In this document: positions 1-42,383 of the stretch, piece by piece
Layout: each line of letters begins with the position of its first letter
Numbering within the stretch: the first letter of the stretch is position 1
Origin: Selaginella moellendorffii
Taxonomy: Eukaryota; Plantae; Lycopodiophyta
Direction: 5' to 3'
Length of the DNA: 64,000 bases
NCBI RefSeq assembly: GCF_000143415.4
Contig: NW_003314325.1
Span: 900,086 to 964,085, forward strand
Notes under the pieces: generated by a model
Told to the model about the DNA's origin: nothing
The model's database searches: none
What the model saw: the letters and a program-made list of their open reading frames with translations, nothing else
Program-made: the position numbers and the translations under genes

Positions 1-827
1 GCCCAAAACGGGTAAGTTCTGGCGTTCTCCCGGCAAATGCCTCTCGATCTAATTCCGTCACATTCTTGCAGCTAATCCCGATGCAAGCTCTCGTCTTCCA
101 GGAGATTGAATTCAAGGACGCCAGCTCCTCGAAGGGATCAAGCCCAACCACATCTCCTTTTTCACGGATGGTCAAGCTCCACCTCTCGAGCTAAGACTTA
201 CCAAAATTCTTCATAAACCGATTAAACAAAACTTTATGTTGGGCAACAAATTCCTTTAGATAGCCGGCACGAACGCCTATGATGCTGATCTACCAGCATC
301 AACCATTCTCTCGTGAGCAGCTGAACCGTCAAAACGGAAGGTTGACCCTGGGCTTTTCGCATTGGGAGCTTTTCGAGCCCACAAGTATGCTGGCTGCATT
401 GTCGATATGGTATGAAGTTCGTTTCAATTTCTGAAAACCATTGGACTTCACAAACTTCTAATGCGGTGAGCGTAGATGGAACACGCGGCCTTAAGATCTT
501 CAGTCTGACGCTCTCTCAACTGGGCTATCCCCGCGTGATAATAATTATCAGCAATATTATCTGGCACATACATATCACATTACAAGTGTCATGAAATTAT
601 TGAGCGCTCTAGAGGAGTGAGATCGTAGAAATGCCACTATAGCTGATATGCTGGCTCAAAACTCACAAGGATCATAGCAAAGATTCTTCCAGCGATCGGC
701 TTTTTTGCTGAAACATGGATGTCTAGAGGTGACTCAACAGCAAACAAAAGAAAACAACAAACGTGGTAGCCGTGTAGAGGGTATAGCTCCTACACGAAAA
801 CATGGAAGAACACACAGAAACAAAGAT

Positions 828-1266
828 CTATCCCATCAGCGGCGGGGGTGCGTAGTGTGGGTTCATGTTCGCGCCTGGACCGCCATAGTCGCTGATCTCT
901 CCAAGGGGCGGGGGCGCGCCGTAGTGTGGGTTCCTATTTGCCCCTGGAGCGTCATAGTCGCTGGTATGGACCTCTCCAAGGAGCTTCCTGCCTTTGAGAG
1001 CCTGGAAGAAAGAGAGAGAACTTCTTATAACAGGAAAGGAAAAGGAAACTTAGAAGAAGATTTCTCAACCTGGCCCTGTGCAGCCGGCAAGCTTGCATCT
1101 GTAAATCCAACTCAAAACAGTGAGAAACGAGATTGTGGAGGAAGGTAACGGAGAAATGAGATCTATATGTGCTCTCTCTACCTTTGTTTCCACTAGTAGC
1201 AAAAGCGGCAGTGATGAGCAGGCATGAGAGCAGGGCTCCGAGCACAAGCTTGCGAGAAGGAGCCAT
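828..1266 (-). CDS. PSY-like sulfated-peptide precursor with two tandem DY cores (95 aa, 3 exons)
   Basis: Exons 1266-1182, 1098-1070, 1001-828, all GT-AG and phase-compatible: MAPSRKLVLGALLSCLLITAAFATSGNKDASLPAAQGQALKGRKLLGEVHTSDYDAPGANRNPHYGAPPPLGEISDYGGPGANMNPHYAPPPLMG*. Signal peptide, RKLL site, cores resemble PSY1 (DYGDPSANPKHDPGVPP). Confidence 0.85.
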
Positions 1267-1542
1267 TTCTATACTAAGAGAGCCTATAGATCCAAACCAG
1301 GAGAAAAAGAATGAGAAAAACAAAGGCCAAGCTCCCGTAGATAAAGGCCGAGGAGCACAGACTCATACAAAAGCTGGCACAGACGTCGAAGGAATGCAAG
1401 TGTTGTCCACTGAGTGGCCAAGAGTTAACGTCGATACATGGTTCCGTTAGTGCATTGGATAAAACGAGTTTTTCTATGTTAATGGGAATTAACATATTTT
1501 ATCAGGAGAGAGAGATCTCGACTAATATATAGCGATCATTAG

Positions 1543-3294
1543 ATGTTGGAAGCATCGAGCAACATCGTGGGATCGCAGCAATCCTTCTTTGCGACGCTCC
1601 TGAGCCAGTCTGGAGGCTCTGGCGATCTCGATCAAACCCGGAAGATCCACTCCCGGATAGTGGACAGCGGCTACTCCAAAGACAAGTTTCTCCTCAATCT
1701 CATCATCCAGGCTTACGGAAAATGCGGCAGTGTCGGAGATGCGCGCCGTGTCTTCTCCGCGATCGATCACCCCAATCTCTTCTCATGGAACATCATGATC
1801 CAAGCATATGCCCGAAACGGGCATCTAGATGAAGCGCGTAACCTCTTTGATCGATCTCATTCCCCCGATCCAGTCGCATGGAATGAAATGATCACTGCCT
1901 ATGCGCAGCTTGGCGAGATGGAGGAAGCCAAAATTTTGTTTGATCGAGTGCCAGAAAAGAGTGAAATCACCTGGACCGGGATGATAACAGCATATGCCAG
2001 AAACGGGCATCTGAACGAAGCCAGGACGGTGTTTGACGCAATGCCGATCGAGAAGAAAACCATAGCTTCGTGGACGGCAATGCTCCAGGGCTACACCCAA
2101 AACTCCCGGATCGATCAGGCCCTTGATTTCTTTCAGACGTTCCCGGCCCACAACGTGGTCTCCATCACCGCCATGGTGTCGGCGCTCACGAGCCACGGCC
2201 GTGGCGACGAGGCCGAGATGCTGTTCTTATTTATGCCCGCGAGGAATTTGCTCTCCTGGACTGTGATGATCCAGGCCTACTCCAAGCAGCAGCGCATCGA
2301 TCGCGTCCGCGAGCTCTTCGAGTCGATGCCCGAGAGGGATCTCATCAGCTCCACGGCGGCGCTCCAGGCATTCTCCCGCGGTGGCGATCTCGACTCGGCC
2401 AAGCGCGTGTTTGATTCCATGCCCGAGCACAACACCATGTCGTGGGGATCAATGGTGGTGGCGCTTGCGGAGCGGCGGCGGCTCGAGGAGGCGGCGCTGC
2501 TCCTGGAAGCTATGCCTGGCGAGAAGAGCGTGGTGGGAGCAACAGCGCTATTCCAGGCGTATGCCCGGGATGGGCATCTATGCGAGGCTGAGATGATCTT
2601 CCGCGAGATGGGTGATCGCGACACCATTGCCCATAATGCGATGCTCCAGGTCTACGCGCAGCACGGCCAGATGGGCGACGCCATTGCGGAGTTTCAATCC
2701 ATGGCGTGGCGAAGCTCCTCATCATGGAACGCGATGCTCTCGGCGTATGCCCAGCACGGGCATGTGGATCACGCGGCGGGTTTCTTCGCGGCTATGCCAA
2801 TCAGGAGCTCTCCTGTGGCGTGGAACGCCATGATCGCGGCGTATAGACGCAACGGCAAGGACGAGCGCGCGATTTCCTCCTTCTGGGCGATGATCCTCGA
2901 GGGGATCCCGTGCGATGCGTCGACCATCGCGAGCGTTCTTGGGAGCTGCAGTCATGCGGGGAGATTTGCCGAGGCGTGGAACTTGTTCCTGGCAATGAAG
3001 AAGGACTTTGGCGTGGATCCATCACACGAGCACTACTCGTGTGTGGCGGACGTTCTCGGGAGATCTGGACTGGTGAGAGACGCCGAGGAGCTCATCAAGA
3101 CAATGCCATTCGTTCCAGATGAGCGTGGCTGCGGTGGATTGCTCAATGCTTGTAGAGTTCATAGGGATTTGGAGAGAGGAGCAAAGGTGGCGATGAATGA
3201 GTTTAAAAGTGAGAGGAGCGAGCCTGTAAGTTACATGCTTCTTGCAAATTTGATTACTGCTAAGATACCAAGTTTGGCTTCTGATTCAAAATAG
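1543..3294 (+). CDS. PLS-class pentatricopeptide repeat protein (many short ~31-aa repeats, E-type C-terminus, no DYW)
   Basis: Intronless 583-aa ORF; repeated SWNxMIxAYAxxGH motifs; C-terminal CSHAG...HYSCVADVLGRSG...MPF...LLNACRVH. Confidence 0.93.
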   Translation: MLEASSNIVGSQQSFFATLLSQSGGSGDLDQTRKIHSRIVDSGYSKDKFLLNLIIQAYGKCGSVGDARRVFSAIDHPNLFSWNIMIQAYARNGHLDEARNLFDRSHSPDPVAWNEMITAYAQLGEMEEAKILFDRVPEKSEITWTGMITAYARNGHLNEARTVFDAMPIEKKTIASWTAMLQGYTQNSRIDQALDFFQTFPAHNVVSITAMVSALTSHGRGDEAEMLFLFMPARNLLSWTVMIQAYSKQQRIDRVRELFESMPERDLISSTAALQAFSRGGDLDSAKRVFDSMPEHNTMSWGSMVVALAERRRLEEAALLLEAMPGEKSVVGATALFQAYARDGHLCEAEMIFREMGDRDTIAHNAMLQVYAQHGQMGDAIAEFQSMAWRSSSSWNAMLSAYAQHGHVDHAAGFFAAMPIRSSPVAWNAMIAAYRRNGKDERAISSFWAMILEGIPCDASTIASVLGSCSHAGRFAEAWNLFLAMKKDFGVDPSHEHYSCVADVLGRSGLVRDAEELIKTMPFVPDERGCGGLLNACRVHRDLERGAKVAMNEFKSERSEPVSYMLLANLITAKIPSLASDSK

Positions 3295-11570: not shown

Positions 11571-11641
11571 GGGGCAAGTCTTATGGTTTATATTCATACC
11601 ATAGGTGATTCATTTATTTCGTCGTTTATTTTTCCACCCAG

Positions 11642-14329
11642 TCAAGCACGAATGAAATCGTTTACCTGGACACTAATGGGGCTCCGTACATAATGGACGC
11701 CATCTGACCAAGTGATGGATCCAAAAGCATAGTGCCCCACTGAACGAACTATTCGAGCAGCCTCAAACGTGATCTCATAAGACAGCTTTGTCACGGAACT
11801 GTTGAAATGGAGAATGTCCGGTTTGACTGTAACTCTGACGCTATGCGGCTCTTCCACGATTGCCCTGTAACTTGAGCATGGTGTCCCTACGTTTGTCACA
11901 ACTCTTCTCACTGTTTTGGCTCCCACCAGATTGGAGATTGTTATCGAGGGATAGTTCAGCTCAGTGGCTGCTAGAGTCTGAGACGAGCATTTGGAGTGTT
12001 CAATCTTGCAAATGCTGCCCAGACTGCAGCAGAAGAGAGCATAGTCTTGAGGAGTGGTAACGTAAACAAGGCCTGGATCTGCTGCTTTGGTTGGATTGAT
12101 GTGTCCGGCACCATATCCGAAGGGGTTGGAATAACTTAGTGTGAAACTATCAGTTATTATATCCCTTGTGTTGTCCATGTTCCAAGCTGCAACCGTGATA
12201 CTTCAGGACAGAACTTGCAAAACCCACATACCTGTTGTCATAATTGCAGACTTGATTGCGGAGGGGCTCCAATCTGGATGCAAGGATTTAAGCAAAGCCG
12301 CAACACCGGAAACGTGAGGACAGGACATGGACGTGCCACTCATCGCTCCAAAACTCTTTGCTGAGCTGCTTGAATGGTTTTTTGGAGGAATAGCAGCGAT
12401 TATGTCAACGCCAGGAGCAATGATATCAGGCTGCAATGCCGGTGATATATCAGATGTTTGAATTTGGAAACCAAATGACTCACAAACCTTTAGAATATCA
12501 GGAGAAATTGGGTTTGGTCCCCTGGCTGAGAAGGTTGCAACAGCAGGGGCTGGTCCAATCCCGGTCACAGTTTCAGGTGGATGGATATAGATCGTTGACG
12601 ATCTGCAATTGAGGTAGGCAAGTTCAAATGATGAAGATAAACAAGATCGATCTGGCTTACTTCTCATGTGATCTGTGACCTAAGAGCTGCACACCGCATG
12701 CACTGGAACTACAAATATAGGGAGCGACAAGCTTCCTGTTATCGATCTGACTGTATCGGTGATTATAATTCCGGTGGCTCCAGCCTTTTCGATAGCATCC
12801 ATGTCCACGGGAAGCTCGGCGCTGGAAGCAAAGCAAAGGACATACTTCCCTCTCAGGGTGGTACCATTCAATCTCGCTTCTGTGCAATAGCTGCAGAGAA
12901 TTCACCTCATCAGAGAGATACTAGTGTCCGAATGTATGCATACCCATCCTCTCCAGAGGCAATTCTATGCAATCCAACTTCAGAACCGGTCCGGTGCTGT
13001 GATGGCGTTGCCTGTCCAAAAACTTCAAAAATGAAGGTTCATACAGCCATTTTGCAAACCTGGCAAGAGGTAGCATTGTCGGGAAGAACGATCTTTGCAT
13101 GGAAACCCCGGTCAATAGTGCTTGCTCCCACACTCAGAATCCAGGGAGCAGTGTTAATGATTGTGGACGGATATGGTCCCGAATTGCCACCACTTGCCAC
13201 AACCAAAATCCCATTCTGGACTGCATGAAATGCGGCAATTGCAATGCCATCCGTGTTGTAGTCGTACGTATTTTCCATGCCTGCAGAAATGGACAGGATG
13301 TCGACTCCGTCATAAATTGCGTAGTCGATTGCAGAAATAATGTCTGCTTCTAAGCTGCTACTCTCTTCATAGAATTTGTACATTGCAAGCCTGGCCATTG
13401 GTGCTCCACCACGAGCTATTCCGCTGCCAAATTCATCATCGCTGGCTCCGTAAACGAGCCTGCCTACAGCGGTCGACGATGTATGCGTGCCGTGAGAGTT
13501 TTTGTCCCTGGGTGATCTGTAATCCTCCACGCTAGGATCCACACTTTGGTCGAAATATCGAGCTCCTATAAGTTTCCTGCATTCATGCAGTTAAAACACA
13601 TGAAACGGCTATACTTCCAAGTTCCAAGCCACTCGGAGGTCCCAACAACGAACCTATTACAGTTTGAAGCCGTGAAGTTCTCGCCTATTTGACATATTCC
13701 CTTCCATCTTGTGGGAACTGCTGGCATTGATTTGTCATTGAAACTCTCAGCTTCAGGCCATACACCTGCAGAAAAGTTCCGAAATTTTGGTATCTGCTGC
13801 ACACTAGAATGTGAAACTTAACAAACACCTGAATCCACAACCCCAACAATTACGTCCACTCCGAAGCCAGATTCTTGCAAAATGCCTTTGGGCTTCATGA
13901 CATCCAGTCCAAGGAAGTCCCAGCTGTGAGTTGTATGCAGCTTCACCTTTTTGCTGCGGAACACAGACACAACTCCAGGCATCTCTGTTGCAGAAGTATT
14001 AGCCTGAAAACTGAGAGCACAGCCACTTACTGGACAAAGCTTTTGCATGCTTTGGATTCATATCTGCTGCGAAACCGCTGAATCCATGCCGGTAGCTGTA
14101 CAAGATAGCACCTTTTGCCAAATCTTCACTTCCCAACACACTGGCCAGCGTTTCGTGATGGGATTTCGTTACCAGTTCGTGGTCTTCGACGATTTTCTTC
14201 CCCATGTAGACTATATAAACCTACGATGGCACCAGTTAGCGACCGATGTAGACTCAATAAAATACTTACCTCTCCCATCGAGCACTGGATTTGAGCCAGA
14301 AGAATAAGAAAAGCGGTTAGTGGTGCCAT
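11642..14329 (-). pseudogene. Subtilisin-like serine protease (S8A) copy 1, frameshifted in the PA domain
   Basis: Signal peptide, I9 prodomain, VDSG / HGTHTSST / [10 protein letters not shown] motifs; 1-bp deletion (gttccagtg vs gttcccagtg in copy 3) gives a stop at 12680 before the catalytic Ser exon. Confidence 0.85.
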
Positions 14330-14666
14330 TCTTCAGGAGTGCAATGCAATGGAAAATCCCTAGCTGCTTTCCGAGCATACCCGGGGTTTGATATAGAGGC
14401 GACACCAGTCAGCATTCTGATCAGATGTACTGTGTGGGCCTTCACGCGCTCAATTTTTCTTTAGTCGCGATGTTGATCTGGCTGGCCCATCCGACCACTA
14501 GTAGTGGACCCGCAAACAGCCAATGGGGTTGTGTGTATCCCCCGTGAAAAGAAAATTCGAGAAGCACATTAGGCTTCGTCCATCGATGATCCTGCATGTA
14601 AAAACATTCTCTTTACAAAGAAAGTCGATGAACAAGAAATTAGCCAACCTTTTAAAAAGAACTTTA

Positions 14667-18659: not shown

Positions 18660-20407
18660 ATGGATCGATGCTGCGCTCATCTGCGTCTCAGATGCTTCCC
18701 GATCAGCAAAGAATCGCCGCTCCAATTCCATCGCCCTGCTCTTCTTGTGCGCCTCGCGGCTGGAAAATCTGTTATTCCGGGCCCTGGATTAACAGATTTT
18801 CCAGGCAAGAAATCCTCGCTTCGTCTCGTTTGCAGCAGAGCGGCAGCGGCGGCTGCGGAGGAGTGCGATCACAACAGGTAATGTGGATTTGGGGGCCAAT
18901 TCGTTTAGAGATCATGAGTTCTTGTTGCCAGTGGTGCGTCGAGCTTTCTGGACCAATACCCGGCGCTGACAACCGGGTCGCTCTTCCTATCTTGGTAAGA
19001 AGAAAAGATAAGAGATTTTTGTTTTCTTCCCTAGCTCCAAATCAAAGGATCGCACAGGTCTCTGTTAAATGCGGTTTTTAATGTCTTGAACAAGCAGGTG
19101 TTTCACTACTTTCCATATCCATGGTAACTTCCTCTTCTTCTTCGTCTTGTTTAGTCTAAATCTTTTTCCTCGCCTTGAACAGTACCATGTCCGTGATTCA
19201 TCTGGCGGTGGGAGTTACATACTGCAGCGTTTGCTGGGCATTTGGAATGCCAAAACGTGTCGTAAGTTTTCGATTTTTTCGCCAGACTACCTATCCTGAT
19301 TTGATTGGTTCCAGCCATTGAGCAAGGAACTGATGAGATTGCTTCTGCCAGTTTCGTTTTGTCACGCTCTGGGACACATCATGACCAACATTTCCTCATC
19401 CACCGTCGCCGTTTCCTTCACGCACACGGTCAAAGGTTTTGTGGTTTTGCTTTTAGTTCATGGAGATTGACAGGATTACTCGTGTTTGCTGCTGGCAGCG
19501 CTGGAGCCTTTCTTCAACGCATCTGCGTCACAGTTTCTTCTGGGACAATCAGTTCCTTTCGCCCTCTGGCTTAGCTTGATACCTGTAGTCGCTGGTAAAT
19601 ATATGCTCTAGATTTGTAAACCTCTTGCATTCTCAAGCTTGGTCCTTCAGGGGTTTCTCTAGCATCACTCACAGAGGTTTCATTTAACTGGAAAGGATTT
19701 CTCAGTGCCATGACGTCGAACGCAGCATACACATACCGAAACATTGTTTCCAAGGAGGCTATGGTACAAAGCATTTCTTCATATCTGATGACGCTCTTTC
19801 TTGTCCTGTCCAGGCAACAATTGACAGCACTAATCTTTACGCTTACATATCTTTGATTTCGCTCTTCATGTGCATACCACCAGCATTACTGGTAAGTAGC
19901 ATTCATTTAATCCACAAGCTTTTAGTAGATCAATGCTTTTTATCTACAGATAGAAGGTCCGAGCCTTGTCAAGCACGGGCTTGCTTCCTCAGTTGCAAAA
20001 GTAGGCATTCGAAAGTTCGTAGCAGATCTAATCGTGGTGGGAGTTTTCTATCATCTGTACAATCAGGTTCGTTCTTTCTCTTCGATAAAGCACGATGCCA
20101 GATATTTCTTGTACGTCTATCAGGTTGGCAACAACACTCTGGAACGAGTAGCGCCTCTGTCACACGCAGTAGGCAACGTACTAAAGCGAGTCGTAGTCAT
20201 CGTATTCTCTATACTTGTTTTTGGTAAGCCTTTCGAGTGATTAGATTGATGATGCAAGTGACTTTCTTTCTGTCTGTAGGAAATCGAATTACAAGACAAA
20301 CTGCTGTAGGCACGACGATGGCAATCGGTGGAGTTGCCTTCTACTCTTTTGCTAAAGCCAAACTAGACGAGATGAAACAACGAGCTCTTTTGAATCAAAA
20401 GCATTAG
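18660..20407 (+). CDS. TPT: Plastid triose-phosphate/phosphate translocator family protein (11 exons, intact)
   Basis: Transit-peptide-like exon 1; spliced exons give [61 protein letters not shown]; all GT-AG and in frame. Confidence 0.88.
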
Positions 20408-20899
20408 TTTTGGATTTGGTCTACCCGCCTCGATTGCATCACCATGCAATTGACATGCTAGGCTGAGAACATCGTGGACTGGAAAGTTATCTTCTTTGGC
20501 CAAACTGGACTCGAGGAGCATTTGCTATAGACGAGCTTTCTTGACAATCGAGCGCTTAGATCCGATCCAGTCGTGCTTTATCTACTCCACAACTTATCAG
20601 CCTTGCCACCTTCCTTTTCCAGGACATAAGCCCACCGAGTCCAAAATCTACAGAGTCTAAAACTCTCAAACACCTCCTCAGCTTCATTGATCCAGATTGT
20701 CACAGCATGAAAGAAGCGTTGTCGCAAAGGCAAAGTTACAAATGCATTGGGCATACAAATCAATCTACACCAGATCTTTCTGTCCAAGTTTCTCATAAAT
20801 TTCTTTAACCAGTTGACCTTGCAGCATATTAAGCAATCCAAACGTTGCTACATGTGGCAATCTGAAAATCCCTGAAAAGTCACTCTTCAAGGAGCGATC

Positions 20900-21400
20900 G
20901 AACACTCTAGTGTTACACCAGGCTAACGAGCGCTACCTTGTGTCCGGCATCATCCACCTCCTCGCTGCTGATGGGCCGCAATCTTGAAGCCCCAAGAGAA
21001 GACGTTTTTGGCATCGAATGCTCGTGCGCTTGCCATACATGTCCACCAGAGGATTGCCGATACTGGTGGAGTGGCGGCCATGGAATCGCAGCTGCGCTTG
21101 CATGCATCCCACATTTCGACACAAGGGCCCCAAACTCCTCCGCATCGATCGCAATGTCCGTGCTCCTGGACGCATGGAGCTGGATCTCTTCCATCGAATA
21201 CTGGAGCTGGACGACTTGGTCCACTCCACCGCGCTCCAATCCAATCGCTCGCGGTCCTCAAGTGGACCAGATCATTGAGCCATGAGAGCTGGCGCTGGAG
21301 AACGCCATCCTGGAGATGTATGCACGATCATGCCCACACCGAGTTGGCGAGCTGGAGCGTCTTGGATGCTTCTAACTTAGATATTTAATTCAAAACATAG
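20900..21400 (-). pseudogene. PPR N-terminal fragment (homologous to 9650-9950, inverted); second copy at ~34510-34980
   Basis: IAIDAEEFGALVSKCG, GNPLVDMYGK, KNVFSWG. Confidence 0.7.
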
Positions 21401-21681
21401 AAGAGATCTACCAGCGATTTTGCTGACTCTCCACAGGGAGGAGCACCGCCAATCCAATGAATCTAGTAAAGCGCAACATTGATAGCGATGGAAATGAAAA
21501 AGTGAGGGATCACTTGATCCTAATTTCTATCGCATCCCCCGATGAGGAGCTGATCTTGCTGATCTCTACCACGGCGTCTTGTTCAACATACACACATGGG
21601 ACACTGTACAAAGCACCTTCGTGCCTCTCTATCTTGATTCTTGATCCACCGCCCGCGATTCCCACTTCGAACTTCACGCGT

Positions 21682-21971
21682 GAAAGAATGAGAGATCTCA
21701 AGCTCGAGTCTGCAAATCAACTCAAAACAATAAGAACCCAGAAAGATAACAAAGAGCATCTGCGCTCTACCTTGGTCTCCATGGCGACCACAAGCTTGGA
21801 AGGAGCCATTTCTATGGTAAACAAGAGAAAGAATGAGAGATCTCAAGCTCGAGTCTGCAAATCAACTCAAAACAATAAGAACCCAGAAAGATAACAAAGA
21901 GCATCTGCGCTCTACCTTGGTCTCCATGGCGACCACAAGCTTGGAAGGAGCCATTTCTATGGTAAACAAGA
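21682..21971 (-). repeat. 145-bp tandem duplication containing a truncated PSY-like exon 1/intron 1 remnant
   Basis: Units 21682-21826 and 21827-21971 bounded by GAAAGAATGAGA; minus strand ATGGCTCCTTCCAAGCTTGTG...ACCAAG|GTAGAG matches the start of the 828-1266 gene with the signal peptide deleted; single copy at 35262-35406. Confidence 0.85.
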
Positions 21972-22027
21972 GAAAGAATGAGAAAAACAAAACGAATATG
22001 TTAGTGTGGAATTGAGGACATGGTTGA

Positions 22028-22700
22028 TCAGGAGAAAAAGATGGCAGATAATATCATTAGACGCGAGCAACGTGGGCTCGCAGCAATCCCTATTTGCTCG
22101 AACATTGCGTTCTGGTAAAGGTGACGTTCGTGGGACAGCCGCATTCGCTGGTACAAGTCAAAGGCGAGGTCGCCGTAGCCATTGACGGAGTACGCAGCGA
22201 TCAAGCTGTTCCAGGATACAACATCCTTGCGTGGCATTGTCCCGAAAGTTGTCCTGGCGTCGCCCAAGCTCGCGCACCTCGCTGACGAGGGCGTTCCGGA
22301 TTTGAGCTCCGTTCTCTGGGCTGCCGCTCGTCGCAAAGCTCTCTTCGACATTGGAGTGGATCAGCCTCGTGGTGTGCAAGTCGACTGGTCCCGTGCAAGC
22401 GTTCATGATCGAGAGAGGCAACGTCGTTTGCCCTCGAGCTCCATTCTCTGGTAGAGCTGAAGCGATTCCGAATTGAGACCTGATGGCGTTCCAAAGATCC
22501 GCACGATTCTTTGAACACGCTCCTGGCGGTGGTAAGCTGGCCTCCGTTTCCATAGATGCTCACCAAAGAGTTGCAAACAACAGTGTCGGAGGACACTCGA
22601 AGGCCCCTAGAGCTCCAGAGAACTTCCATGAAGCCCGAGAAAGACGCATAGGTGACGATGAGAGTGTTCCGGGAGATCACGTCGGGCTGGTCCGGGACAC
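22028..22700 (-). pseudogene. PPR pseudogene fragment; second copy at ~35640-36300
   Basis: NSLVSIYG, CASLGDARTTFGTMPRKDVVSWNSLIAAYSVNG; frameshifts. Confidence 0.75.
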
Positions 22701-23659
22701 CCCTGATTCAAGTGAAGTCATATCCTAGATAAAAGAGCCTGTAATGTAATGCAATGTCTCTTTGTATTGCCAGTAGACAAGTATATTATGTGGGTGTTGG
22801 AGCTGAGGTGGAGTCTAAGTTAAGAATCCCTGTCTGGTGCAGGTGGGCGACTGCTCTGCGTATGCTTGCTTGCTTTGCTTGCCACCACAATGAGCATTGT
22901 GGTTGAAATAGTTATAAATTTAAACCTTTGATCTTTTTCAAGAGATATTTTGAGAAACAGAAAAATCTGGTGACCTGATGATGCCCAGTGCGGGCAATCC
23001 CAAGATACACGAGCACCTACAGACGCTTCTTTCATGCTGTGACGATCAGGGCGATGGAGAAGAGATCCATGCTTGTATCGTGAGGGCTGGGATCGAATGG
23101 GACGTCGCCATGTCCACTGCATTGGGGCGCTTCTGCTCAGTGGACTCGACCTTAAAACTCCCAAGCTTAAAAGTCTTAGCTACAGCGTAGCTCTTCCATG
23201 CCAGAGCACTGACTTCTCCAGCCAGCCGAGCTTCCTGGAGTGATTCCTTAGAATCTCTGTGGCACACACTCCTCAAGGAGCGACCGAACAAGGTTGCCCT
23301 GCTCCAGAGCCAAGCAAGACCTCGCCAGCCTAAGGAACGCAACCTTATGTGTCCTTGCTTCGCTCACTCCCTCCACCACTCTTTGCTGCTAGCATAGGCC
23401 GTGATCAAGAATCCCAATAGAAGACGTTCTTGTCGGCGATGCGCGTGCGTCGTGCGCGCTGCCATGTGGAATCGCAGCTGCCTGCTTCCAGGAGAAAATA
23501 TTCTAATTGTTTAGAGAATATTCGCGGCTAAGCACATCGGCACCGTTGATAGTCGATCACATCTCAGCCGTCGGCGAAACGCCATCCCAGCCGTCGACAT
23601 ATAGTCGTTGTGGGTTTCTACCCTTTTATTTTTCATATCAAGGAAGCTTGCGCGAGAGG

Positions 23660-24498
23660 AGAAGCTTGCGCGAAGACGGTGAGTTCGAGGAGGACGATTG
23701 TGCCGAGCTCCTCAAGATCCACACGAGGGGCCAGGGCCAGGTTTTCGTGCTCAACGCCGGGAAGATGTTTCAATCGGGGAGGGAGGCCGGGAGAGAGCTC
23801 CGGCTCATGTCAAAGCTCCGCGGCTGCGCTGGAGTGGTCTCCTTGGCGGGCTTCGTGAGGAAGAGGAGCGGCGGGGCTTGCTACGGGACCATGGTGATGG
23901 AGCTGTGTGGTCCTAGTCTGTGCCATCGATTGATCAAGGGAGGGCCGCTGGGCGAGAAGGAGGCCGCCAAGACCATCCAGCGGCTGGCGGAGGGGCTCAA
24001 GGGGATACATACCAGCGGCATCATCCACCCGAATCTCAAGCCGGAGAACATCTTCGTCAAGCTGGACGCTACTGCCGTGCACGAGGTGGTGATTGGAGAC
24101 TTTGGAGTGGCCACGGACGACCCCAAGGAGATGTCGCAGTACTGTGGAACCGGGAAGTATATGGCCCCGGAGATGACGAGCTGTAAGAGTGGTCATGGTG
24201 ACTCAAGGTTGCGGAGCTTTTACACTACAGCCATCGACGTGTGGGAGTGATCACATATGAGCTGCTGAGAGGCTACAAGCAATCCAGGGAGATCGAGTTG
24301 TTTCGAGCCGGAGAATTCCCGGATGGTTGTCCTCTCTCAGACGAGGCGGAGGATTTCATCTGTGGGATGCCGATCGAGAGGTTGACGCTGGATGGTGTGC
24401 TGGAGCATCCCTGGATCGTGGAGAATTGCAGCAGTAAGATCAAGAAGACGATTCATAGGAGGAGGCGCTGTGGAGTGAAGAGGAGTGCTTGGTTGTGA
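23660..24498 (+). pseudogene. Ser/Thr protein kinase-like gene, frameshifted, catalytic Asp replaced
   Basis: IIHPNLKPEN, IGDFGVA, YCGTGKYMAPEM, AIDVW then frameshift (7 nt missing relative to IWALGV in the 15.5-16 kb copy). Confidence 0.8.
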
Positions 24499-25567
24499 AG
24501 AAAGTTCGAGCAGCGTGAGTTATATTATCGCTAACCCGTTTTCCTCCGTCACAACGCTCTTAAAATGTGAGACTGGTCAAACAAATCTCCATGATACAAA
24601 GAATCCTCTTCAGTCAACGCGTGTTTGTTGCTTTCATTTAGTTTTCAGGTGGATTGTTGTGTTTGAGACCACATGCTGGAGCAGTATAAAGGGGTGAAAT
24701 TCGGGCGAGAGTTAAGCGTGCTCGTCTGGGTACCTCCAAATGGGCCGTTGGCCCTGGGCGTGGCCAACTTCATCGTGGTCTTTGATTAAACGTCGTTTTT
24801 TAGAATTTTTTAAAAAAAACTTCACCTAAAATCTCAAAGAGTTATGCGGCCATTAGCGTGAAGATATCTGACTAAGTGATAGGCATTTGGTTGAAGATGC
24901 AACTTTAACATGTTGCAACTAAAAACAGTGAAAGCATTGTTTGCCCTAGAGCTGTCTTTCAACACCTTGCAACTTTGCCTGATATTTTAATTGTAGAGGT
25001 CTGTTTGTTTTGGTTTTGGTTGAATTTCTAGGCGTCATTCTCGCATCAGCATACTCATACCAGTACACATACCGCCTCATAAACAGCAGATTCACCACTT
25101 CAGGATACATTTGAATCTATTCAATCTCAAAAGTAAAGGCTCCAGGGTTGAATTGACACATATTCTCCTATGCGCACTAAGAGCTTACGCAGCTTTGAAC
25201 AGGAACGGCTTGTTCATCGACTTTCTTCGTAGAGAGAATGTTTTTACATGCAGGATCATCGATGGACGAAGCCTAATGTTCTTCTCGATTTTTTTTTTAT
25301 CTGCAATGAGTACTGTGTATTGTTCCTGTTCGATCCTGCATTCAAAGTTCTGCTGCAGTGAATTGCTGGGGGAAGTGGCAGCACTACAACCCCATTGGCT
25401 GTTTGCGGCTCCACTACTAGTGGTCGGATTCAAATTGCAACTAAAGAAAATTCGAGTGCCTGAAGGCCCACACCGTACATCTGATCAGAATGCTGAGCCT
25501 CTATATCAACCCCCGGGTATGCTCGGAAAGCAGCTAGGGATTTTCCATTGCATTGCACTCCTGAAGA

Positions 25568-28246
25568 ATGGCACCACTAACCGCTTTTCTTATTCTTCTG
25601 GCTCAAATCCAGTGCTCGATGGGAGAGGTAAGTATTTTATTGAGTCTACATCGGTCGCTAACTGGTGCCATCGTAGGTTTATATAGTCTACATGGGGAAG
25701 AAAACCGTCGAAGACCACGAACTGGTAACGAAATCCCATCACGAAACGCTGGCCAGTGTGTTGGGAAGTGAAGATTTGGCAAAAGGTGCTATCTTGTACA
25801 GCTACCGGCATGGATTCAGCGGTTTCGCAGCAGATATGAATCCAAGGCATGCAAAAGCTTTGTCCAGTAAGTGGCTGTGCTCTCAGTTTTCAGGCTAATA
25901 CTTCTGCAACAGAGATGCCTGGAGTTGTGTCTGTGTTCCGCAGCAAAAAGGTGAAGCTGCATACAACTCACAGCTGGGACTTCCTTGGATTGGATGTCAT
26001 GAAGCCCAAAGGCATTTTGCAAGAATCGGGCTTCGGAGTGGACGTAATTGTTGGGGTTGTGGATTCAGGTGTTTGTTAAGTTTCACATTCTAGTGTGCAG
26101 CAGATACCAAAATTTCGGAACTTTTCTGCAGGTGTATGGCCTGAAGCTGAGAGTTTCAATGACAAATCAATGCCAGCAGTTCCCACAAGATGGAAGGGAA
26201 TATGTCAAATAGGCGAGAACTTCACGGCTTCAAACTGTAATAGGTTCGTTGTTGGGACCTCCGAGTGGCTTGGAACTTGGAAGTATAGCCGTTTCATGTG
26301 TTTTAACTGCATGAATGCAGGAAACTTATAGGAGCTCGATATTTCGACCAAAGTGTGGATCCTAGCGTGGAGGATTACAGATCACCCAGGGACAAAAACT
26401 CTCACGGCACGCATACATCGTCGACCGCTGTAGGCAGGCTCGTTTACGGAGCCAGCGATGATGAATTTGGCAGCGGAATAGCTCGTGGTGGAGCACCAAT
26501 GGCCAGGCTTGCAATGTACAAATTCTATGAAGAGAGTAGCAGCTTAGAAGCAGACATTATTTCTGCAATCGACTACGCAATTTATGACGGAGTCGACATC
26601 CTGTCCATTTCTGCAGGCATGGAAAATACGTACGACTACAACACGGATGGCATTGCAATTGCCGCATTTCATGCAGTCCAGAATGGGATTTTGGTTGTGG
26701 CAAGTGGTGGCAATTCGGGACCATATCCGTCCACAATCATTAACACTGCTCCCTGGATTCTGAGTGTGGGAGCAAGCACTATTGACCGGGGTTTCCATGC
26801 AAAGATCGTTCTTCCCGACAATGCTACCTCTTGCCAGGTTTGCAAAATGGCTGTATGAACCTTCATTTTTGAAGTTTTTGGACAGGCAACGCCATCACAG
26901 CACCGGACCGGTTCTGAAGTTGGATTGCATAGAATTGCCTCTGGAGAGGATGGGTATGCATACATTCGGACACTAGTATCTCTCTGATGAGGTGAATTCT
27001 CTGCAGCTATTGCACAGAAGCGAGATTGAATGGTACCACCCTGAGAGGGAAGTATGTCCTTTGCTTTGCTTCCAGCGCCGAGCTTCCCGTGGACATGGAT
27101 GCTATCGAAAAGGCTGGAGCCACCGGAATTATAATCACCGATACAGTCAGATCGATAACAGGAAGCTTGTCGCTCCCTATATTTGTAGTTCCAGTGCATG
27201 CGGTGTGCAGCTCTTAGGTCACAGATCACATGAGAAGTAAGCCAGATCGATCTTGTTTATCTTCATCATTTGAACTTGCCTACCTCAATTGCAGATCGTC
27301 AACGATCTATATCCATCCACCTGAAACTGTGACCGGGATTGGACCAGCCCCTGCTGTTGCAACCTTCTCAGCCAGGGGACCAAACCCAATTTCTCCTGAT
27401 ATTCTGAAGGTTTGTGAGTCCTTTGGTTTTCAAATTGATATATCACCGGCATTGCAGCCTGATATCATTGCTCCTGGCGTTGACATAATCGCTGCTATTC
27501 CTCCAAAAAGCCATTCAAGCAGCTCAGCAAAGAGTTTTGGAGCGAAGAGTGGCACGTCCATGTCCTGTCCTCACGTTTCCGGTGTTGCGGCTTTGCTTAA
27601 ATCCTTGCATCCAGATTGGAGCCCCTCCGCAATCAAGTCTGCAATTATGACAACAGGTATGTGGGTTTTGCAAGCTCTGTCCTGAAGTATCACGCTTGCA
27701 GCTTGGAACATGGACAACACAAGGGATATAATAACTGATAGTTTCACACTAAGTTATTCCAACCCCTTCGGATATGGTGCAGGACACATCAATCCAACCA
27801 AAGCAGCAGATCCAGGCCTTGTTTACGTTACCACTCCTCAAGACTATGCTCTCTTCTGCTGCAGTCTGGGCAGCATTTGCAAGATTGAACACTCCAAATG
27901 CTCGTCTCAGACTCTAGCAGCCACTGAGCTGAACTATCCCTCGATAACAATCTCCAATCTGGTGGGAGCCAAAACAGTGAAAAGAGTTGTGACAAACGTA
28001 GGGACACCATGCTCAAGTTACAGGGCAATCGTGGAAGAGCCGCATAGCGTCAGAGTTACAGTCAAACCGGACATTCTCCATTTCAACAGTTCCGTGACAA
28101 AGCTGTCTTATGAGATCACGTTTGAGGCTGCTCAAATAGTTCGTTCAGTGGGGCACTATGCTTTTGGCTCCATCACTTGGTCAGATGGCGTCCATTATGT
28201 ACGGAGCCCCATTAGTGTCCAGGTAAACGATTTCATTCGTGCTTGA
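25568..28246 (+). pseudogene. Subtilisin-like serine protease copy 2, same frameshift as copy 1
   Basis: Same exon structure as copy 3; stop at 27215-27217 after [12 protein letters not shown]. Confidence 0.85.
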
Positions 28247-28915
28247 CTGGGTGGTAAATAAACGACGAAATAAATGTTTCTTGCATCCTAAGCGAGAATC
28301 ATCTATGGTATGAATATAAACCATAAGACTTGCCCCTCTTTGATTTCAAAAGCAATTCAATGTTTCGTGAAGCCCCAAACCATTTACCATTTCAGTTGGC
28401 GAGTGCAACTGTGTTGTAAATCATTGCCTTTGTTCCAAAGCTATCAACAACGTGGGACTATTCCAGAAAACTACGACTTGCGATCAGGAATTGTTGACTC
28501 TTGACGATAGCCTGCTGCTTGTAGCGCTCGTGTCCACCATCGGTCTCCCAATCTGTTTCCAACAGTTCTTCAATCAATTGTAGAGGATAGCGATTCCAGA
28601 CAGTGAAGTCGATCACCAGGCTGCCGTCCTAAGATGGGTGCTCCAGTTGGAGATTGAATGAAGCCTGAAGCAAAATTCTCCTCAATATCGTACTGGCAGT
28701 GGACCCTTTGACTCTTGTAAAAGTCAACATAGTATTATCTTCAAATTATGTGAGCACAATGAGCTCCTCATTCTTTAGACACCACATTTTCTTAACTATT
28801 AAGTTTGTTTAACAGGTGTCAAGCTCAAAGCTACGTGTTGGAATCGACGTAGAACAGGTTTCCTTTCATCCCGAGAGCCCTCCCCCAAACTTGCTGAGAG
28901 ATCCTTCCATCCCAA

Positions 28916-30283
28916 ATGGTGAGGTCGGTGCCCGCCAATGAGAATCACATTCCTTCCGCAGTTGCCAGGCGAAGTGTTGCTTCCGGTAAGAAACTCGAAT
29001 ACAGAAAAGATCTCTATACGAATGCATTGCTCCAGCATGGAAGAGCTACGCCATAGCAGCGACACTGGGTGTTCTTCTCTCGTGGGCTTACTTGTCTGGA
29101 GTGAAGGCTCCGCCTCCTCGAATTTGCGGGCAGCCGAATGGACCTCCAGTGACCGCTCCAAGGATTGTTCTTAGTGATGGTAGAAAATTGGCTTACAGTG
29201 AAAGAGGGGTTCCAAAGGAACAAGCAAAACACAAACTCATTGTTGTGCATGGCCTTGAAGGGTCCAGACACCAATCCCTTTCACTGGTATCACAGGTATG
29301 GTTTCTAGGATTTTCCAAGTTCGGTTTTAAGAATGAAACAAGCAACTCTTCTCATTAACTTCCACCGTGTTTTGGTCTTTCCTAGGAGCTTCTCGAGGAG
29401 CTGAGTGTGTACATGGTGTCTTACGATCGAGCCGGTTATGGACAGAGCGACCCAAATCCAACACGAACCGTGAAGTCGGAGGCTTTCGACGTTGAAGAAC
29501 TCGCAGACCAACTTGAGCTGGGGCCAAAGTTTTACTTGGCATCTATCTCGATTGGAGGCTACACCGCTTGGTCTTGCCTTTACTACATCCCCCACAGGTA
29601 AAACGTTCATTCCATGTCTCATAGTTCTTTTCGTTTCGTTGTTCGGAGAACTAACTTTTCGCTATAGATTGGCTGGAGTTTTGATGTTCTCGCCCGTCAC
29701 AAACTTCTGGTGGTCGAAGCTCCCATCCCGGGAAGCCTACAATGCGTTTCACACGCAGGCCATTGGAGACAAGCTCGCGCTGCTCGTCGCTCACTACACC
29801 CCTTCCTTCCTCTACTTTTGGATGACACAAAAGCTTCTCCCAACCTCGAGCACCATGGGAGCGCTCCACTTACATTGCAACCCAATGGACAGGGACACAA
29901 TACTCGGAGGAAAACCGGATCCTGCTGTAAGTTTCAATACTCCCGATTGTTTCTATGATACTCATGTAGTTTTCATCGTCCAGATTGCCGAAGAGGCAAT
30001 GCAGCAGGGGATCTTCGAGTCGAAAATACGCGACAAGATGGTCATGTTTGGCAACTGGGAGTTCGACCCCTCGGAAGTCCCGGATCCATTCCCGAGCAAG
30101 AATGGGTCGGTTCACATATGGCAGGGTGACGAAGACTGTCTCGTCCCTGTGGCGTTGCAGCGCGCTGTCCATCGATCCCTCCCGTGGATCCAGTATCATG
30201 AACTTGCCGGGGTTGGGCATTTGCTCCATGCTGCGCCGGGTGTGACTGAGAAAGCATTTCGCCAGCTCTTCCAATCATCCTGA
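28916..30283 (+). CDS. Membrane-anchored alpha/beta-hydrolase, copy 1 (intact; start codon uncertain)
   Basis: Spliced: TM anchor, PPPRICGQPNGPPVTAPRIVLSDGRKLAY, VHG, YDRAGYGQSDP, nucleophile SISIG, WQGDED, GHLLH. Confidence 0.8.
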
Positions 30284-30477
30284 TACCCAATGAACACGTC
30301 ACTGTGGATGTAAAATATGCTAATTTACAAAAATGTTTTACGGCCTTTCATTGACTTCGCATTGACGCTGTTGACTTTACATTGACCATGTTGACTTTCA
30401 TAGAGCTTCGACACCATGGAGGGGAAAATGCTGGAATCTTAGCGTTCCAGCTTCTCGGGAGCAATGCTCTTGCTTTT

Positions 30478-32817
30478 TCAAACGCTGGCCAGCAAGAGAT
30501 CATACCCAGCGCCATCCCTGGCATCCATCCTCACCAGATTCTCAAACGCGGCTCTGGCGAGATCATAGCTCTCCCACCGCCGGCAAGAGCTCAAGATCGT
30601 CCTCCACGCCACCGCATTCGCCCGGAAGGGCATCGATCGCAGCAGCTCCACCGCGGCATCCAGCTCGTTGGCTCGACCCAAGAGATCCACCATGCACACG
30701 TAGTGCTCCATCTCCGGCTCCACGCCATACCTCTCCGCCATCGCTGCGAAGAACTCCTTCCCCTTCTCCACCAGCCCGCCGTGGCTACACGCCGCCAGCA
30801 CGCTCTGGATCGTCACGGCGTTGGGCGCCACTCCGTCCTCGACCATCGCTCCAAACAGCGCGATCGCGCGCTGGGACTCGCGGCTGTGGGCGGTGATGAT
30901 CGACGTCCACGCGATCACGCCTCTGGATCCAGCGCCATCGAAGATGCGATCCGCGAGGAGGAGAGCTCCACACTTTCCATACGCGTCCACCAGCGCCGCC
31001 ACTAGAATCTCCTCCTCCGCCAGCCCCGACCGGCAAATCTCGCCATGGATCACTCGCGCGGCGTCCAGCGCCGCCGCCATCGCCGCCGCCTTGAGCCCCG
31101 CCGCGTAGCAGTGAGCGTCCGGCGCGATGGAGCTCGCGCTCGCGAGGATCATGCTCCAGAAGAGATCCAGCGCCGCTCCAGCCTCGCCACTCTCGCAGCA
31201 CGCCAGCAGCAGCGACGTGATCGCCACCACGTCGCAGCGATCGATCGACTGGAAAGCTCGCCGCGCGTCGTCCAAGCTCCCACACTTGGAGTAGAGATCC
31301 ACAAGCGAGCTCGCCACCTTGCTCGAGACGGCTAAAGCTTGGGAGTGTAGCTCCATCCCTCTCTCCAGAGCTCCAAGCTTGACGAGTTTGCCCTCGTCCA
31401 TCTCCACGCTCTCCTCACGGGCCGCCATAGCCATGCAAGCTTTGAGCGCTGGAAGAAGAATGGAGCCACTGCCGCCACCGCCGCCACTTGGATCTTGTCT
31501 CATCCATTCTAGAGCTAGCTCCACGGCGAGCTCGGGCACCTCGTTCTCGGCATAGCCGAGCACCAAAACGTTCCACGACACGGAAGTGTGAGCCGGCATC
31601 CTATCGAAAACCCGGCGAGCATCGACCAAGCTTCCACACTTTGCGTACATTCCCACCAAGCTGTTGGCCACGAAGGTGTCCGAGTCTTGTGAAGATCTCG
31701 CTGCCTGAGAGTGAATCGCCATCCCGGTTTCCAAAGCTTCCAGCTTTCTCGCATCAAACGCTCGGGAGCTTCTTGCCAAGACTTTCTTTCTTCTATCAAC
31801 CTGGACGCTCTTTCCCGGGAAAGTTTCCATCCTTCTTCCATCGATCTGTGAGCTATCTTCCTGTTGAGAGCTCCTTGCCGAGGCTTCCATCTTCCTCCCA
31901 TCCATCTGCGGCTTTCTTTCTGCCTTTGTTCTGTCTCTCTGCGAGGCGATTGTCGTGCAAGCCTTGAGAGCAGCGACGAAAGCTCGAGCATTGGGAGCGC
32001 AGCCCCGGCGTTGCATGCTCCCAAACAGCTCAAGCGCCGTCTCTCCCTGCCCGTTGTCCGCGTAGCCGAGCATGAGAGCGGTGTAAGTCACAACGTCGCA
32101 GCTGGGCATCTTGTCGAAAACTCGCCGAGCCAGCACCAAGCTCCCACACTTTGCGTACATGTCCACGAGACTGCTCGTCACAAAAGCGTCCGACTCGCAG
32201 TGCACCATCGCTGCCTGTGAGTGAATTTCGAGGCCTTGCTCCAGAGCTCGCAACTTCAAACGAGCTCCGTCGTGACTTTGTTGCTCAGCTTCTTTCGCTG
32301 CCAAGTTACTGCAAGCTCTGAGGGCGGCCACGAAAGTTCCAGCATTTGGAGCGTAGCCTCCGAGTTTCATGTTGAAGAAGAGCTTGAGAGCGAGCTCTTC
32401 TTCGCCATTGCTTGCGTATCCCAGCATGAGAGCGTTCCAGAGAACCGTGTCCTGGTTGAGAGTCGAGTTGAAAACCTTTAGTGCCTCCCCCATGCTCTCG
32501 CATTTTGCGTACATGTTGATCAAGGAGGTGGCGATGAATGTGTCCGACTGCAGCCCGATCTCGGTGGCTCGAGAGTGAAGGATTTTTCCCGTGCGGAGGT
32601 CTCTTGAGCTCGTGCATACCTTCAGCGCAGCAAGTAACTTGGATCTCGCTGCTCCGTTTGCAAGCATACAAGGATGCAAAGGCTGCAAAACAAAGACATG
32701 ACAAAATGATGAAGCATTCACTAATGCTTTAGCTGAATGAAAGTGCAAGGTACCTATATCACTGTTGAAGGCATTTGGGTCGAAGCAGCGCAATCCAAAA
32801 GAGCAGCAAAACTTCAT
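30478..32817 (-). CDS. PLS-class PPR protein with insertion loops, E-type end, copy 1 (true start may be the downstream MLANG)
   Basis: 779-aa ORF; SLVDMYAKCGSL..ARRVF repeats; CSHGGLV...HYVCMVDLLGR. Confidence 0.9.
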   Translation of the reverse strand: MKFCCSFGLRCFDPNAFNSDIGTLHFHSAKALVNASSFCHVFVLQPLHPCMLANGAARSKLLAALKVCTSSRDLRTGKILHSRATEIGLQSDTFIATSLINMYAKCESMGEALKVFNSTLNQDTVLWNALMLGYASNGEEELALKLFFNMKLGGYAPNAGTFVAALRACSNLAAKEAEQQSHDGARLKLRALEQGLEIHSQAAMVHCESDAFVTSSLVDMYAKCGSLVLARRVFDKMPSCDVVTYTALMLGYADNGQGETALELFGSMQRRGCAPNARAFVAALKACTTIASQRDRTKAERKPQMDGRKMEASARSSQQEDSSQIDGRRMETFPGKSVQVDRRKKVLARSSRAFDARKLEALETGMAIHSQAARSSQDSDTFVANSLVGMYAKCGSLVDARRVFDRMPAHTSVSWNVLVLGYAENEVPELAVELALEWMRQDPSGGGGGSGSILLPALKACMAMAAREESVEMDEGKLVKLGALERGMELHSQALAVSSKVASSLVDLYSKCGSLDDARRAFQSIDRCDVVAITSLLLACCESGEAGAALDLFWSMILASASSIAPDAHCYAAGLKAAAMAAALDAARVIHGEICRSGLAEEEILVAALVDAYGKCGALLLADRIFDGAGSRGVIAWTSIITAHSRESQRAIALFGAMVEDGVAPNAVTIQSVLAACSHGGLVEKGKEFFAAMAERYGVEPEMEHYVCMVDLLGRANELDAAVELLRSMPFRANAVAWRTILSSCRRWESYDLARAAFENLVRMDARDGAGYDLLLASV

Positions 32818-32927
32818 CTATCTGCAACAAAACCCTAGAGAAGTTCCTCCAACAGAAGTCTTAGTCTTTGTTGTCAATCTTTCAATTAAGAGATTAAATA
32901 AAAGAATCGTCTTGAAGTACCTATCTT

Positions 32928-42227: not shown

Positions 42228-42383
42228 TACCCTGGATGTAAACATATGCTAATTTACAAAAAAGTTTTAACAGCCTTTCATTGACTTCGCATTGACTATG
42301 TTGACTTTGCATTGACCATGTTGTAGAGAGCTGGAGGGGCAAATGTAGCGTTCCAGCTTCTCGGGAGCAATGCTATGGCTTCT

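What the first reader, a model, noticed from the sequence alone, without database searches (positions are those of the whole stretch)
828..1001. PSY-like precursor with two tandem peptide cores, each carrying a second tyrosine
An intragenic ~70-bp duplication encodes DYDAPGANRNPHYGAPPP and DYGGPGANMNPHYAPPP, each preceded by LGE...S. PSY precursors that I know carry a single core with N-x-x-H spacing. Here spacing is N-x-x-x-H followed by Tyr and a Pro run (candidate Hyp-arabinosylation site). The PGAN motif also recalls the bacterial PSY mimic RaxX. One precursor could release two distinct ligands.
Basis: partly seen in the sequence, partly recalled or inferred. Interest (0 to 1): 0.8.

Follow-up and report, generated by a model that had tools for sequence, protein, structure and literature searches.

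The report
Spikemoss two-core PSY-like peptide gene
A small three-exon gene missing from the public annotation of the spikemoss Selaginella moellendorffii most likely encodes a secreted precursor with two copies of a divergent PSY-like sulfated growth-peptide motif, which makes it a lineage-specific variant of a known plant hormone type, not a new class.

Summary
Window 1001..828 (minus strand) is an open exon with a tandem 69-nt duplication (77% identical, unique in the window). It encodes two DY-x-x-P-G-A-N-x-N-P-H-Y...PPP cores, each preceded by LGE..S.

With a signal-peptide-like exon 1 (1266..1182) and a 29-nt exon 2 (1098..1070), both introns GT-AG, it gives a 95-aa precursor. The window is Selaginella moellendorffii GL377629.1:900086-964085, where this copy carries no called gene.

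Five further copies lie nearby and on the other haplotype scaffold. Two are annotated as hypothetical proteins and use the same splice junctions.

Between paralogues A and B, exon 3 shows pN/pS 0.12, with 9 of 11 differences at third codon positions. Intron 2 is only 64% identical, so the frame is under purifying selection.

Both published PSY motif definitions (NXXHXP after DY) fail. Only the N-terminal half, DYxxxx[AP]N, fits.

Two points are not new. Rice OsPSY1 has four PSY-like repeats, and moss PSY-like peptides with shifted H/P positions are published.

The scan has already found this kind of gene on other DNA of this genome (s1-348975, s1-394651). Verdict: real gene, new variant of a known kind, modest interest.

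The parts
1182..1266 (-). Exon 1 (85 nt, ATG at 1266..1264). It encodes a signal-peptide-like N-terminus, followed by a GT donor at 1181.
   Evidence: Basic n-region (R5, K6); 11-residue hydropathy windows up to 2.8 over residues 7-18; small residues A-F-A at 21-23. The same exon is present at 97.6% identity in copies A', C and D.
1198..1266 (-). Predicted signal peptide (residues 1-23), with inferred cleavage after the A-F-A triplet.
   Evidence: Hydropathy profile. The cleavage site is inferred from the -3/-1 small-residue rule; no dedicated predictor was available.
1099..1181 (-). Intron 1 (83 nt, GT..AG).
   Evidence: GC 0.41, against 0.54-0.66 in the exons. The public model of paralogue D removes the same intron.
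1070..1098 (-). Exon 2 (29 nt, phase 1), part of the pro-region.
   Evidence: It is needed to keep exon 3 in the frame of the cores. Copy C has a 9-nt in-frame deletion here. The public models P0001 and P0002 join it to exon 3 in the same way.
1002..1069 (-). Intron 2 (68 nt, GT..AG).
   Evidence: GC 0.35. Between copies A and B it is only 64% identical with 38 gap columns, while the flanking exon 3 is 94% identical.
828..1001 (-). Exon 3 (174 nt including stop TAG 830..828). It holds the end of the pro-region, core 1, a 5-residue linker, core 2 and a 3-residue tail.
   Evidence: A versus B gives pS 0.196, pN 0.023, ratio 0.12, with 9 of 11 differences at codon position 3 (P=0.0014). Fisher test on synonymous versus non-synonymous sites gives P=0.0006.
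906..959 (-). Core 1 (18 residues): DY, P5 G6 A7 N8, N10 P11 H12 Y13, and a terminal PPP.
840..890 (-). Core 2 (17 residues), with the same invariant positions. It differs from core 1 at positions 3, 4 and 9 and lacks one Gly before the Pro run.
825..962 (-). Tandem duplication, two units of 69 nt (825-893 and 894-962), 77% identical.

Best explanation
This is a real but unannotated three-exon gene of Selaginella moellendorffii. It belongs to a local family of at least four loci per haplotype.

It encodes a 95-residue secreted precursor with these parts:
- a signal peptide
- a pro-region of about 29 residues
- two tandem 17-18-residue cores that start with Asp-Tyr and end in a Pro run

Inferred mechanism, by analogy with PSY, RGF and CIF peptides. 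After entry into the secretory pathway, the Golgi tyrosylprotein sulfotransferase sulfates the Tyr of each Asp-Tyr pair. Some prolines of the terminal PPP are hydroxylated and possibly arabinosylated. Subtilase-type proteases cut near the repeated LGE..S context. This releases two related but non-identical sulfopeptides, which are read by an LRR receptor kinase of the PSY-receptor type.

What is shown: the sequence anatomy, the paralogues and purifying selection on the frame. What is inferred: secretion, sulfation, processing and the receptor.

The peptides are best described as a divergent, lycophyte-specific PSY-like variant. They are not canonical PSY.
For: - **Anatomy:** a frame-consistent GT-AG model with no internal stop, a GC drop in both introns and a signal-peptide-like N-terminus.
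- **Public models:** the models of two paralogues use the same junctions. These are P0002 = SELMODRAFT_424964 and P0001 = SELMODRAFT_424023/424969.
- **Conservation:** exon 3 is 94% identical between copies A and B, against 64% for intron 2.
- **Selection between paralogues:** pN/pS is 0.12, 9 of 11 differences fall at third codon positions, Fisher P=0.0006.
- **Selection between the two cores:** three synonymous changes and three non-synonymous changes, all of the latter at variable positions.
- **Invariant positions:** D1, Y2, P5, A7, N8, N10, H12, Y13 and PPP are the same in all 11 cores of six loci.
- **Frame kept:** copy C has an in-frame 9-nt deletion in exon 2.
- **Fit to PSY:** DYX4[AP]N is met. 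Similarity is higher to AtPSY1 and RaxX21 than to RGF1, with blastp-short E of 29-41 against 2871 or more. Shuffles reach the AtPSY1 score in 1.3% of trials for core 2 and 7% for core 1.
- **Weak lead:** ESM Atlas feature search rank 2 is 'putative Protein PSY3-like', score 0.81.
- **Enzyme present:** TPST is reported in S. moellendorffii (PMC8462819).
Against: - There is no RNA evidence.
- No transcript-derived copy of the protein exists in the 5.8-billion-protein collection.
- Both published PSY motif definitions fail, because His lies four residues after N8 (or two after N10) and no Pro stands two residues after His.
- The E-value to the AtPSY1 18-mer is 41 at proteome-size search space, above the published cut-off of 20.
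- No relatives were found outside S. moellendorffii among 1.84 billion representative proteins.
- Some copies look degraded. Copy D has lost core 2, copy B has lost the canonical exon 1, and copies A' and C carry Arg or Leu at position 11 of core 2.
Confidence: 0.62

Rival explanations
1. It is a real secreted DY-sulfopeptide precursor, but of a separate lycophyte-specific family with its own receptor. On this reading the likeness to PSY is limited to the generic sulfation and N-terminal context, and it is not a PSYR ligand.
For: NXXHXP is not met in any of the 11 cores. His12 followed by an invariant Tyr13 has no counterpart in the published PSY consensus. No homologue was found outside this species. 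Pfam, NCBIfam and PDB gave no hit.
Against: The first eight positions fit DYX4[AP]N and match RaxX21 at six of eight. The length (17-18 residues), the position near the C-terminus of a short precursor and the terminal Pro run all parallel AtPSY1. A two-residue insertion is tolerated in the active nematode MigPSY3 (PMC10629525). Moss PSY-like peptides with shifted H/P positions are bioactive.
Confidence: 0.23
2. It is a non-functional or silent duplicate: a decaying member of a segmentally duplicated block that is not expressed. The public annotation would then be right to leave it out.
For: No gene is called at L002:1792-2230 in GCA_000143415.2. No transcript-derived protein is in the collections. 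Sister copies show truncation (D), loss of exon 1 (B) and non-conservative changes at one core position (A', C).
Against: The window copy has an intact ATG, intact splice sites and an intact frame. pN/pS between A and B is 0.12 with a strong third-position bias, which a long-neutral sequence would not give. Small peptide genes are commonly missed by annotation (PMC8462819).
Confidence: 0.12
3. [quoted passage not shown]
For: D1, Y2, P5, G6 and H12 coincide with AtRGF1 as quoted in PMC8462819.
Against: There is no C-terminal His-Asn and no PP before His. blastp-short E is 2871 or worse. Shuffles reach the alignment score in 27-46% of trials.
Confidence: 0.03

Closest known systems
PSY family (AtPSY1 and AtPSY1-9, rice and wheat PSYs)
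   Same: Short secreted precursor, with the motif near the C-terminus. The motif starts with Asp-Tyr and has Pro at position 5, Ala-Asn at 7-8, a downstream His and a terminal Pro run. The core length of 17-18 residues matches the 18 of mature AtPSY1.
   Different: The spacing is N-x-x-x-H instead of N-x-x-H. Tyr-Gly/Ala follows His instead of x-Pro, so DYXXXX[AP]NXXHXP and DYX5-7NXXHXP are not met.
[quoted passage not shown]
   Same: Several PSY-type cores in one precursor, arising by internal tandem duplication.
   Different: Here there are two cores, not four. They have diverged (13 of 17 alignable residues identical) and carry the non-canonical second half.
Xanthomonas RaxX (RaxX21, PMC4646787)
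   Same: It shares DY-x-x-PGAN, followed by His and PPP.
   Different: RaxX keeps N-P-K-H-D-P, the canonical spacing. It is a bacterial mimic sulfated by RaxST and unrelated by descent.
Physcomitrium patens PSY-like (PSYL) peptides (bioRxiv 10.1101/2024.05.13.593875)
   Same: Lineage-specific, DY-initiated PSY-like motifs in which the conserved H and P are shifted relative to PSY. They are encoded by small genes that were poorly or wrongly annotated.
   Different: They were found in mosses and one liverwort, with no lycophyte member reported. Their sequences are held only as an image table, so direct homology could not be tested here.
RGF/GLV/CLEL peptides
   Same: DY start, Pro5-Gly6, and His at position 12.
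   Different: The defining C-terminal PP-x-His-Asn is absent, and similarity is no better than shuffled controls.

Membership tests
[quoted passage not shown] | N-terminal secretion signal (criterion 4 of Pruitt et al., bioRxiv 10.1101/116897) | tested here: met
   basic n-region, a hydrophobic core of about 16 residues (hydropathy up to 2.8), and A-F-A before the inferred cut. This is a heuristic only; no SignalP-type predictor was available.
[quoted passage not shown] | Precursor of 60-200 residues with the motif in the second half (Pruitt et al.; Tost et al., PMC7913133) | tested here: met
   The model has 95 residues, with cores at residues 53-70 and 76-92.
[quoted passage not shown] | Motif begins with an invariant Asp-Tyr | tested here: met
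   Both cores here, and all 11 cores of six loci.
[quoted passage not shown] | 13-residue motif DYXXXX[AP]NXXHXP (PMC11641228) or DYX5-7NXXHXP (PMC10629525). The five conserved residues are DY, N, H and P (PMC7913133). | tested here: not met
   both regular expressions fail for both cores, and only DYX4[AP]N matches. His is at +4 from N8 (or +2 from N10), and the residue two after His is Gly or Ala, not Pro.
[quoted passage not shown] | BLAST match to the AtPSY1 18-mer with E <= 20 (PAM30) | tested here: inconclusive
   the best E is 41 at an assumed search space of 1.3e7 residues. The published cut-off depends on the database used, so this is a near miss and not a clear failure.
[quoted passage not shown] | Tyr sulfation by TPST, Hyp formation and arabinosylation, and release of a peptide of about 18 residues | not testable with these tools
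   This needs peptidomics or in vitro TPST assays.
[quoted passage not shown] | Perception by PSYR-type LRR receptor kinases | not testable with these tools
   This needs binding or bioassays.
RGF/GLV/CLEL | DY start with C-terminal PP-x-His-Asn | tested here: not met
   there is no His-Asn, and similarity is at the level of shuffled controls.
Moss PSY-like (PSYL) peptides | Sequence homology to the P. patens Family 2 precursors | not tested
   Only the motif description is in the text. The sequences are not held as text, so only the shared property of a shifted H/P can be stated.

The most novel reading that the evidence does not exclude
The invariant N-x-N-P-H-Y...PPP second half could define a lycophyte-specific class of tyrosine-sulfated ligands with its own receptor specificity. 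The two diverged cores of one precursor would then be separate signals, for example an agonist and a modulator, or ligands of two receptors. That would be a two-hormone precursor in an early vascular plant.
Probability: 0.15. Interest if true: 0.6.

Novelty: new variant of a known kind. Interest (0 to 1): 0.3.

Why it matters
PSY peptides set the balance between growth and stress responses in seed plants, and their history in early vascular plants is thinly documented. The survey of non-flowering plants reports PSY candidates from a moss, a liverwort and a conifer, but names none from Selaginella (PMC8462819).

This family shows that the spikemoss keeps a selected, multi-copy set of PSY-like genes whose second half departs from the consensus used in genome-wide PSY searches. 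Motif-based surveys would therefore miss them.

It also gives concrete peptides to test how much of the PSY motif a PSYR-type receptor needs. It is still an extension of known biology, and its two headline features both have published precedents.

Tried and rejected
- **Family and structure searches:** Pfam and NCBIfam scans of exon 3 found no family apart from a chance amidase match at E 0.64. The PDB sequence search found nothing.
- **Tandem Repeats Finder:** no rows. The duplication was found with the repeat finder instead.
- **Word-index protein searches:** the search with exon 3 found nothing in the 32-100-residue range. The search with P0001 found only P0001 and P0002.
- **Exhaustive phmmer:** the third hit, P0003, is a bacterial seven-bladed beta-propeller lactonase. 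I rejected it as a compositional match.
- **Spliced model:** All searches used exon 3 by reference or stored public proteins. The exons were joined only inside a local script, to check the frame, the absence of stops and the N-terminal hydropathy.
- **Other readings rejected:** the antisense ORF 705..1148 (+) is only an ORF under bacterial start-codon rules, and the third-position bias fits the minus-strand frame. Splicing exon 1 directly to exon 3 shifts the frame away from the cores. The RGF reading fails on the His-Asn end.
- **Papers not available:** Ogawa-Ohnishi et al. 2022 is not held, and the supplements of PMC8462819 are not held.

Full report
**Observation**

On the minus strand, window 1001..828 translates without a stop into the end of a pro-region, an 18-residue core, a five-residue linker, a 17-residue core and a three-residue tail before TAG.
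- Both cores start with Asp-Tyr.
- Both share P5, G6, A7, N8, N10, P11, H12 and Y13, and both end in three prolines.
- Each is preceded by LGE..S.

At the DNA level the two halves are a direct tandem repeat, 825-893 and 894-962, with 53 of 69 bases identical. The binomial tail is 1.6e-18, and it is the only adjacent 69-mer pair in the 64-kb window at that identity. The first half of the motif occurs nowhere else in the six-frame translation of the window.

**Gene model**

| Part | Window coordinates | Notes |
|---|---|---|
| Exon 1 | 1266..1182 | ATG at 1266; 85 nt; basic n-region, long hydrophobic stretch, A-F-A triplet: the usual build of a signal peptide |
| Intron 1 | 1181..1099 | GT..AG |
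| Exon 2 | 1098..1070 | 29 nt |
| Intron 2 | 1069..1002 | GT..AG |
| Exon 3 | 1001..828 | the frame that holds the cores |

The product has 95 residues and no internal stop. The introns have 35-41% G+C, against 54-66% in the exons. Skipping exon 2 would shift exon 3 out of the frame of the cores.

It was joined only inside a local script, to check frame and hydropathy. All searches used exon 3 by reference.

**Organism and copies**

An exhaustive phmmer search of exon 3 against 1.84 billion representative proteins gave three hits.
- Two are hypothetical proteins of Selaginella moellendorffii: P0001 = SELMODRAFT_424023/424969 (UniProt D8SNJ6) and P0002 = SELMODRAFT_424964.
- The third is a bacterial beta-propeller lactonase and is spurious.

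Fetching their loci showed that L002 positions 1-3057 equal window 3057-1 at 100% identity. The window is therefore GL377629.1:900086-964085 of GCA_000143415.2. No gene is called at the place of the finding.

Motif scans and alignment of the loci give six copies:

| Copy | Place | State |
|---|---|---|
| A | the finding (window) | intact three exons, two cores, unannotated |
| A' | L001:1667-2105, other scaffold (GL377635.1) | two cores; Arg at position 11 of core 2 |
| C | L003:363-800 | two cores; Leu at that position; 9-nt in-frame deletion in exon 2 |
| B and B' | L002 and L001, about 3 kb downstream of A and A' | two cores; canonical exon 1 replaced; annotated as P0001 |
| D | L003, from 5001 | one core, then truncated; annotated as P0002 with an extension that looks spurious |

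The public models of B and D use the same exon 2 and exon 3 junctions as my model. The model of D also uses the same exon 1 junction.

**Is it a gene under selection?**

Between A and B, exon 3 is 94% identical. Intron 2 is 64% identical with 38 gap columns, and the 5' part is unalignable.

In exon 3, eight differences are synonymous and three are not. This gives pS 0.196, pN 0.023 and a ratio of 0.12. Nine of eleven differences fall on third codon positions (P=0.0014), and Fisher's test on sites gives P=0.0006. The three replacements lie in the pro-region, at variable position 4 of core 1, and in the linker.

Between the two cores of one gene there are three synonymous changes and three replacements, the latter at positions 3, 4 and 9. 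The internal duplication is older than the A/B split, because both carry the same two core types.

Across 11 cores of six loci, D1, Y2, P5, A7, N8, N10, H12, Y13 and the Pro run never change. This is the signature of a coding sequence whose two cores are both kept.

**Family membership**

Pfam, NCBIfam and the PDB give nothing. The published definitions of the PSY motif are:
- DYXXXX[AP]NXXHXP (PMC11641228)
- DYX5-7NXXHXP (PMC10629525)
- the five conserved residues DY, N, H and P (PMC7913133)

Both cores match DYX4[AP]N, but both fail NXXHXP. His lies four residues after N8 (or two after N10), and the residue two after His is Gly or Ala.

Against the AtPSY1 18-mer and RaxX21 quoted in the papers, blastp-short with PAM30 gives E of 29-41 at a proteome-size search space. 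That is near but above the published cut-off of 20. RGF1 gives 2871 or worse.

Shuffled cores reach the AtPSY1 alignment score in 1.3% (core 2) and 7% (core 1) of trials, and the RGF1 score in 27-46%. A language-model feature search puts a 'PSY3-like' plant cluster second at 0.81, which is a lead only.

So the peptide works most like a PSY, and is closer to PSY than to any other DY peptide. Strict membership is not shown.

**What is already known**

The nematode MigPSY3 tolerates a two-residue insertion between DY and NXXHXP. The second Tyr follows His, not Asp. The Asp-Tyr pair is described as the minimum requirement for sulfation, so a second sulfation there is unlikely. Its invariance still suggests a role in recognition.

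**Most likely mechanism (inferred)**

1. The signal peptide is removed.
2. TPST sulfates Tyr2 of each core in the Golgi. TPST is reported in S. moellendorffii (PMC8462819).
3. Prolines of the terminal Pro run are hydroxylated and perhaps arabinosylated.
4. Cleavage near the repeated LGE..S context releases two related peptides of 17-18 residues.
5. A PSYR-type receptor kinase perceives them.

**Not tested**

No transcript-derived copy of these proteins is in the 5.8-billion-protein collection; this is weak negative evidence, since short ORFs are often not called.

**Verdict**

It is a lycophyte variant of the PSY type, not a new class, and its multi-core build is not new. The same kind of gene was already reported by this scan on neighbouring DNA and on another piece of this genome (s1-348975, s1-394651).

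Noticed in passing
window 1543-3294 (+): An intronless 583-residue PPR protein gene (15 PPR repeats by Pfam) starts only 277 nt from the ATG of the peptide gene, in divergent orientation. The same PPR gene sits next to the sister copies in L001 and L003, so PPR gene, peptide gene(s) and a GDSL lipase gene were duplicated together as a block.
   Followed up: partly
window 20273-33000 vs 34275-45000; inverted copy 11630-14400: There is a tandem segmental duplication of about 12-14 kb at 97-100% identity, which includes a 779/778-residue PPR ORF at 30478-32817 and 42384-44720. There is also an inverted partial copy, with arms 12453-14400 and 25497-27444 that are 99% complementary. It could be true recent duplication or an assembly artefact of the two haplotypes.
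   Followed up: no
window 26355-26858 (+), mirrored near 13000-13524 (-) and about 38600: Subtilase (Peptidase_S8, E 4e-18) gene fragments lie inside the duplicated block, 12-25 kb from the peptide gene. Subtilases process sulfated peptide precursors in Arabidopsis, but nothing here links them functionally.
   Followed up: partly
L002:5001-5135 (paralogue B, 1.9-2.5 kb before the window start): The public model SELMODRAFT_424023 starts with an exon unrelated to the canonical signal-peptide exon of copies A, C and D. Either copy B recruited a new first exon, or the model is wrong at its 5' end.
   Followed up: partly
L003:5001-6299 (paralogue D, P0002): The public 186-residue model SELMODRAFT_424964 keeps exons 1-3 up to the end of core 1. 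It then runs into unrelated sequence where a deletion has removed core 2. It is probably a truncated copy with a spurious annotated extension.
   Followed up: partly
window 857-859 (codon 11 of core 2) and the same codon in L001 and L003: The middle base of this one codon differs in three otherwise near-identical copies, giving Pro, Arg or Leu. It is the only replacement among copies A, A' and C in exon 3. This could reflect relaxed or diversifying selection at a variable ligand position.
   Followed up: no
window 53442-54980 (+) and 23507-24250 (+): An ORF with a glycosyltransferase family 61 domain, and an ORF with a protein kinase domain fragment. Both are ordinary plant genes and were not examined further.
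   Followed up: no
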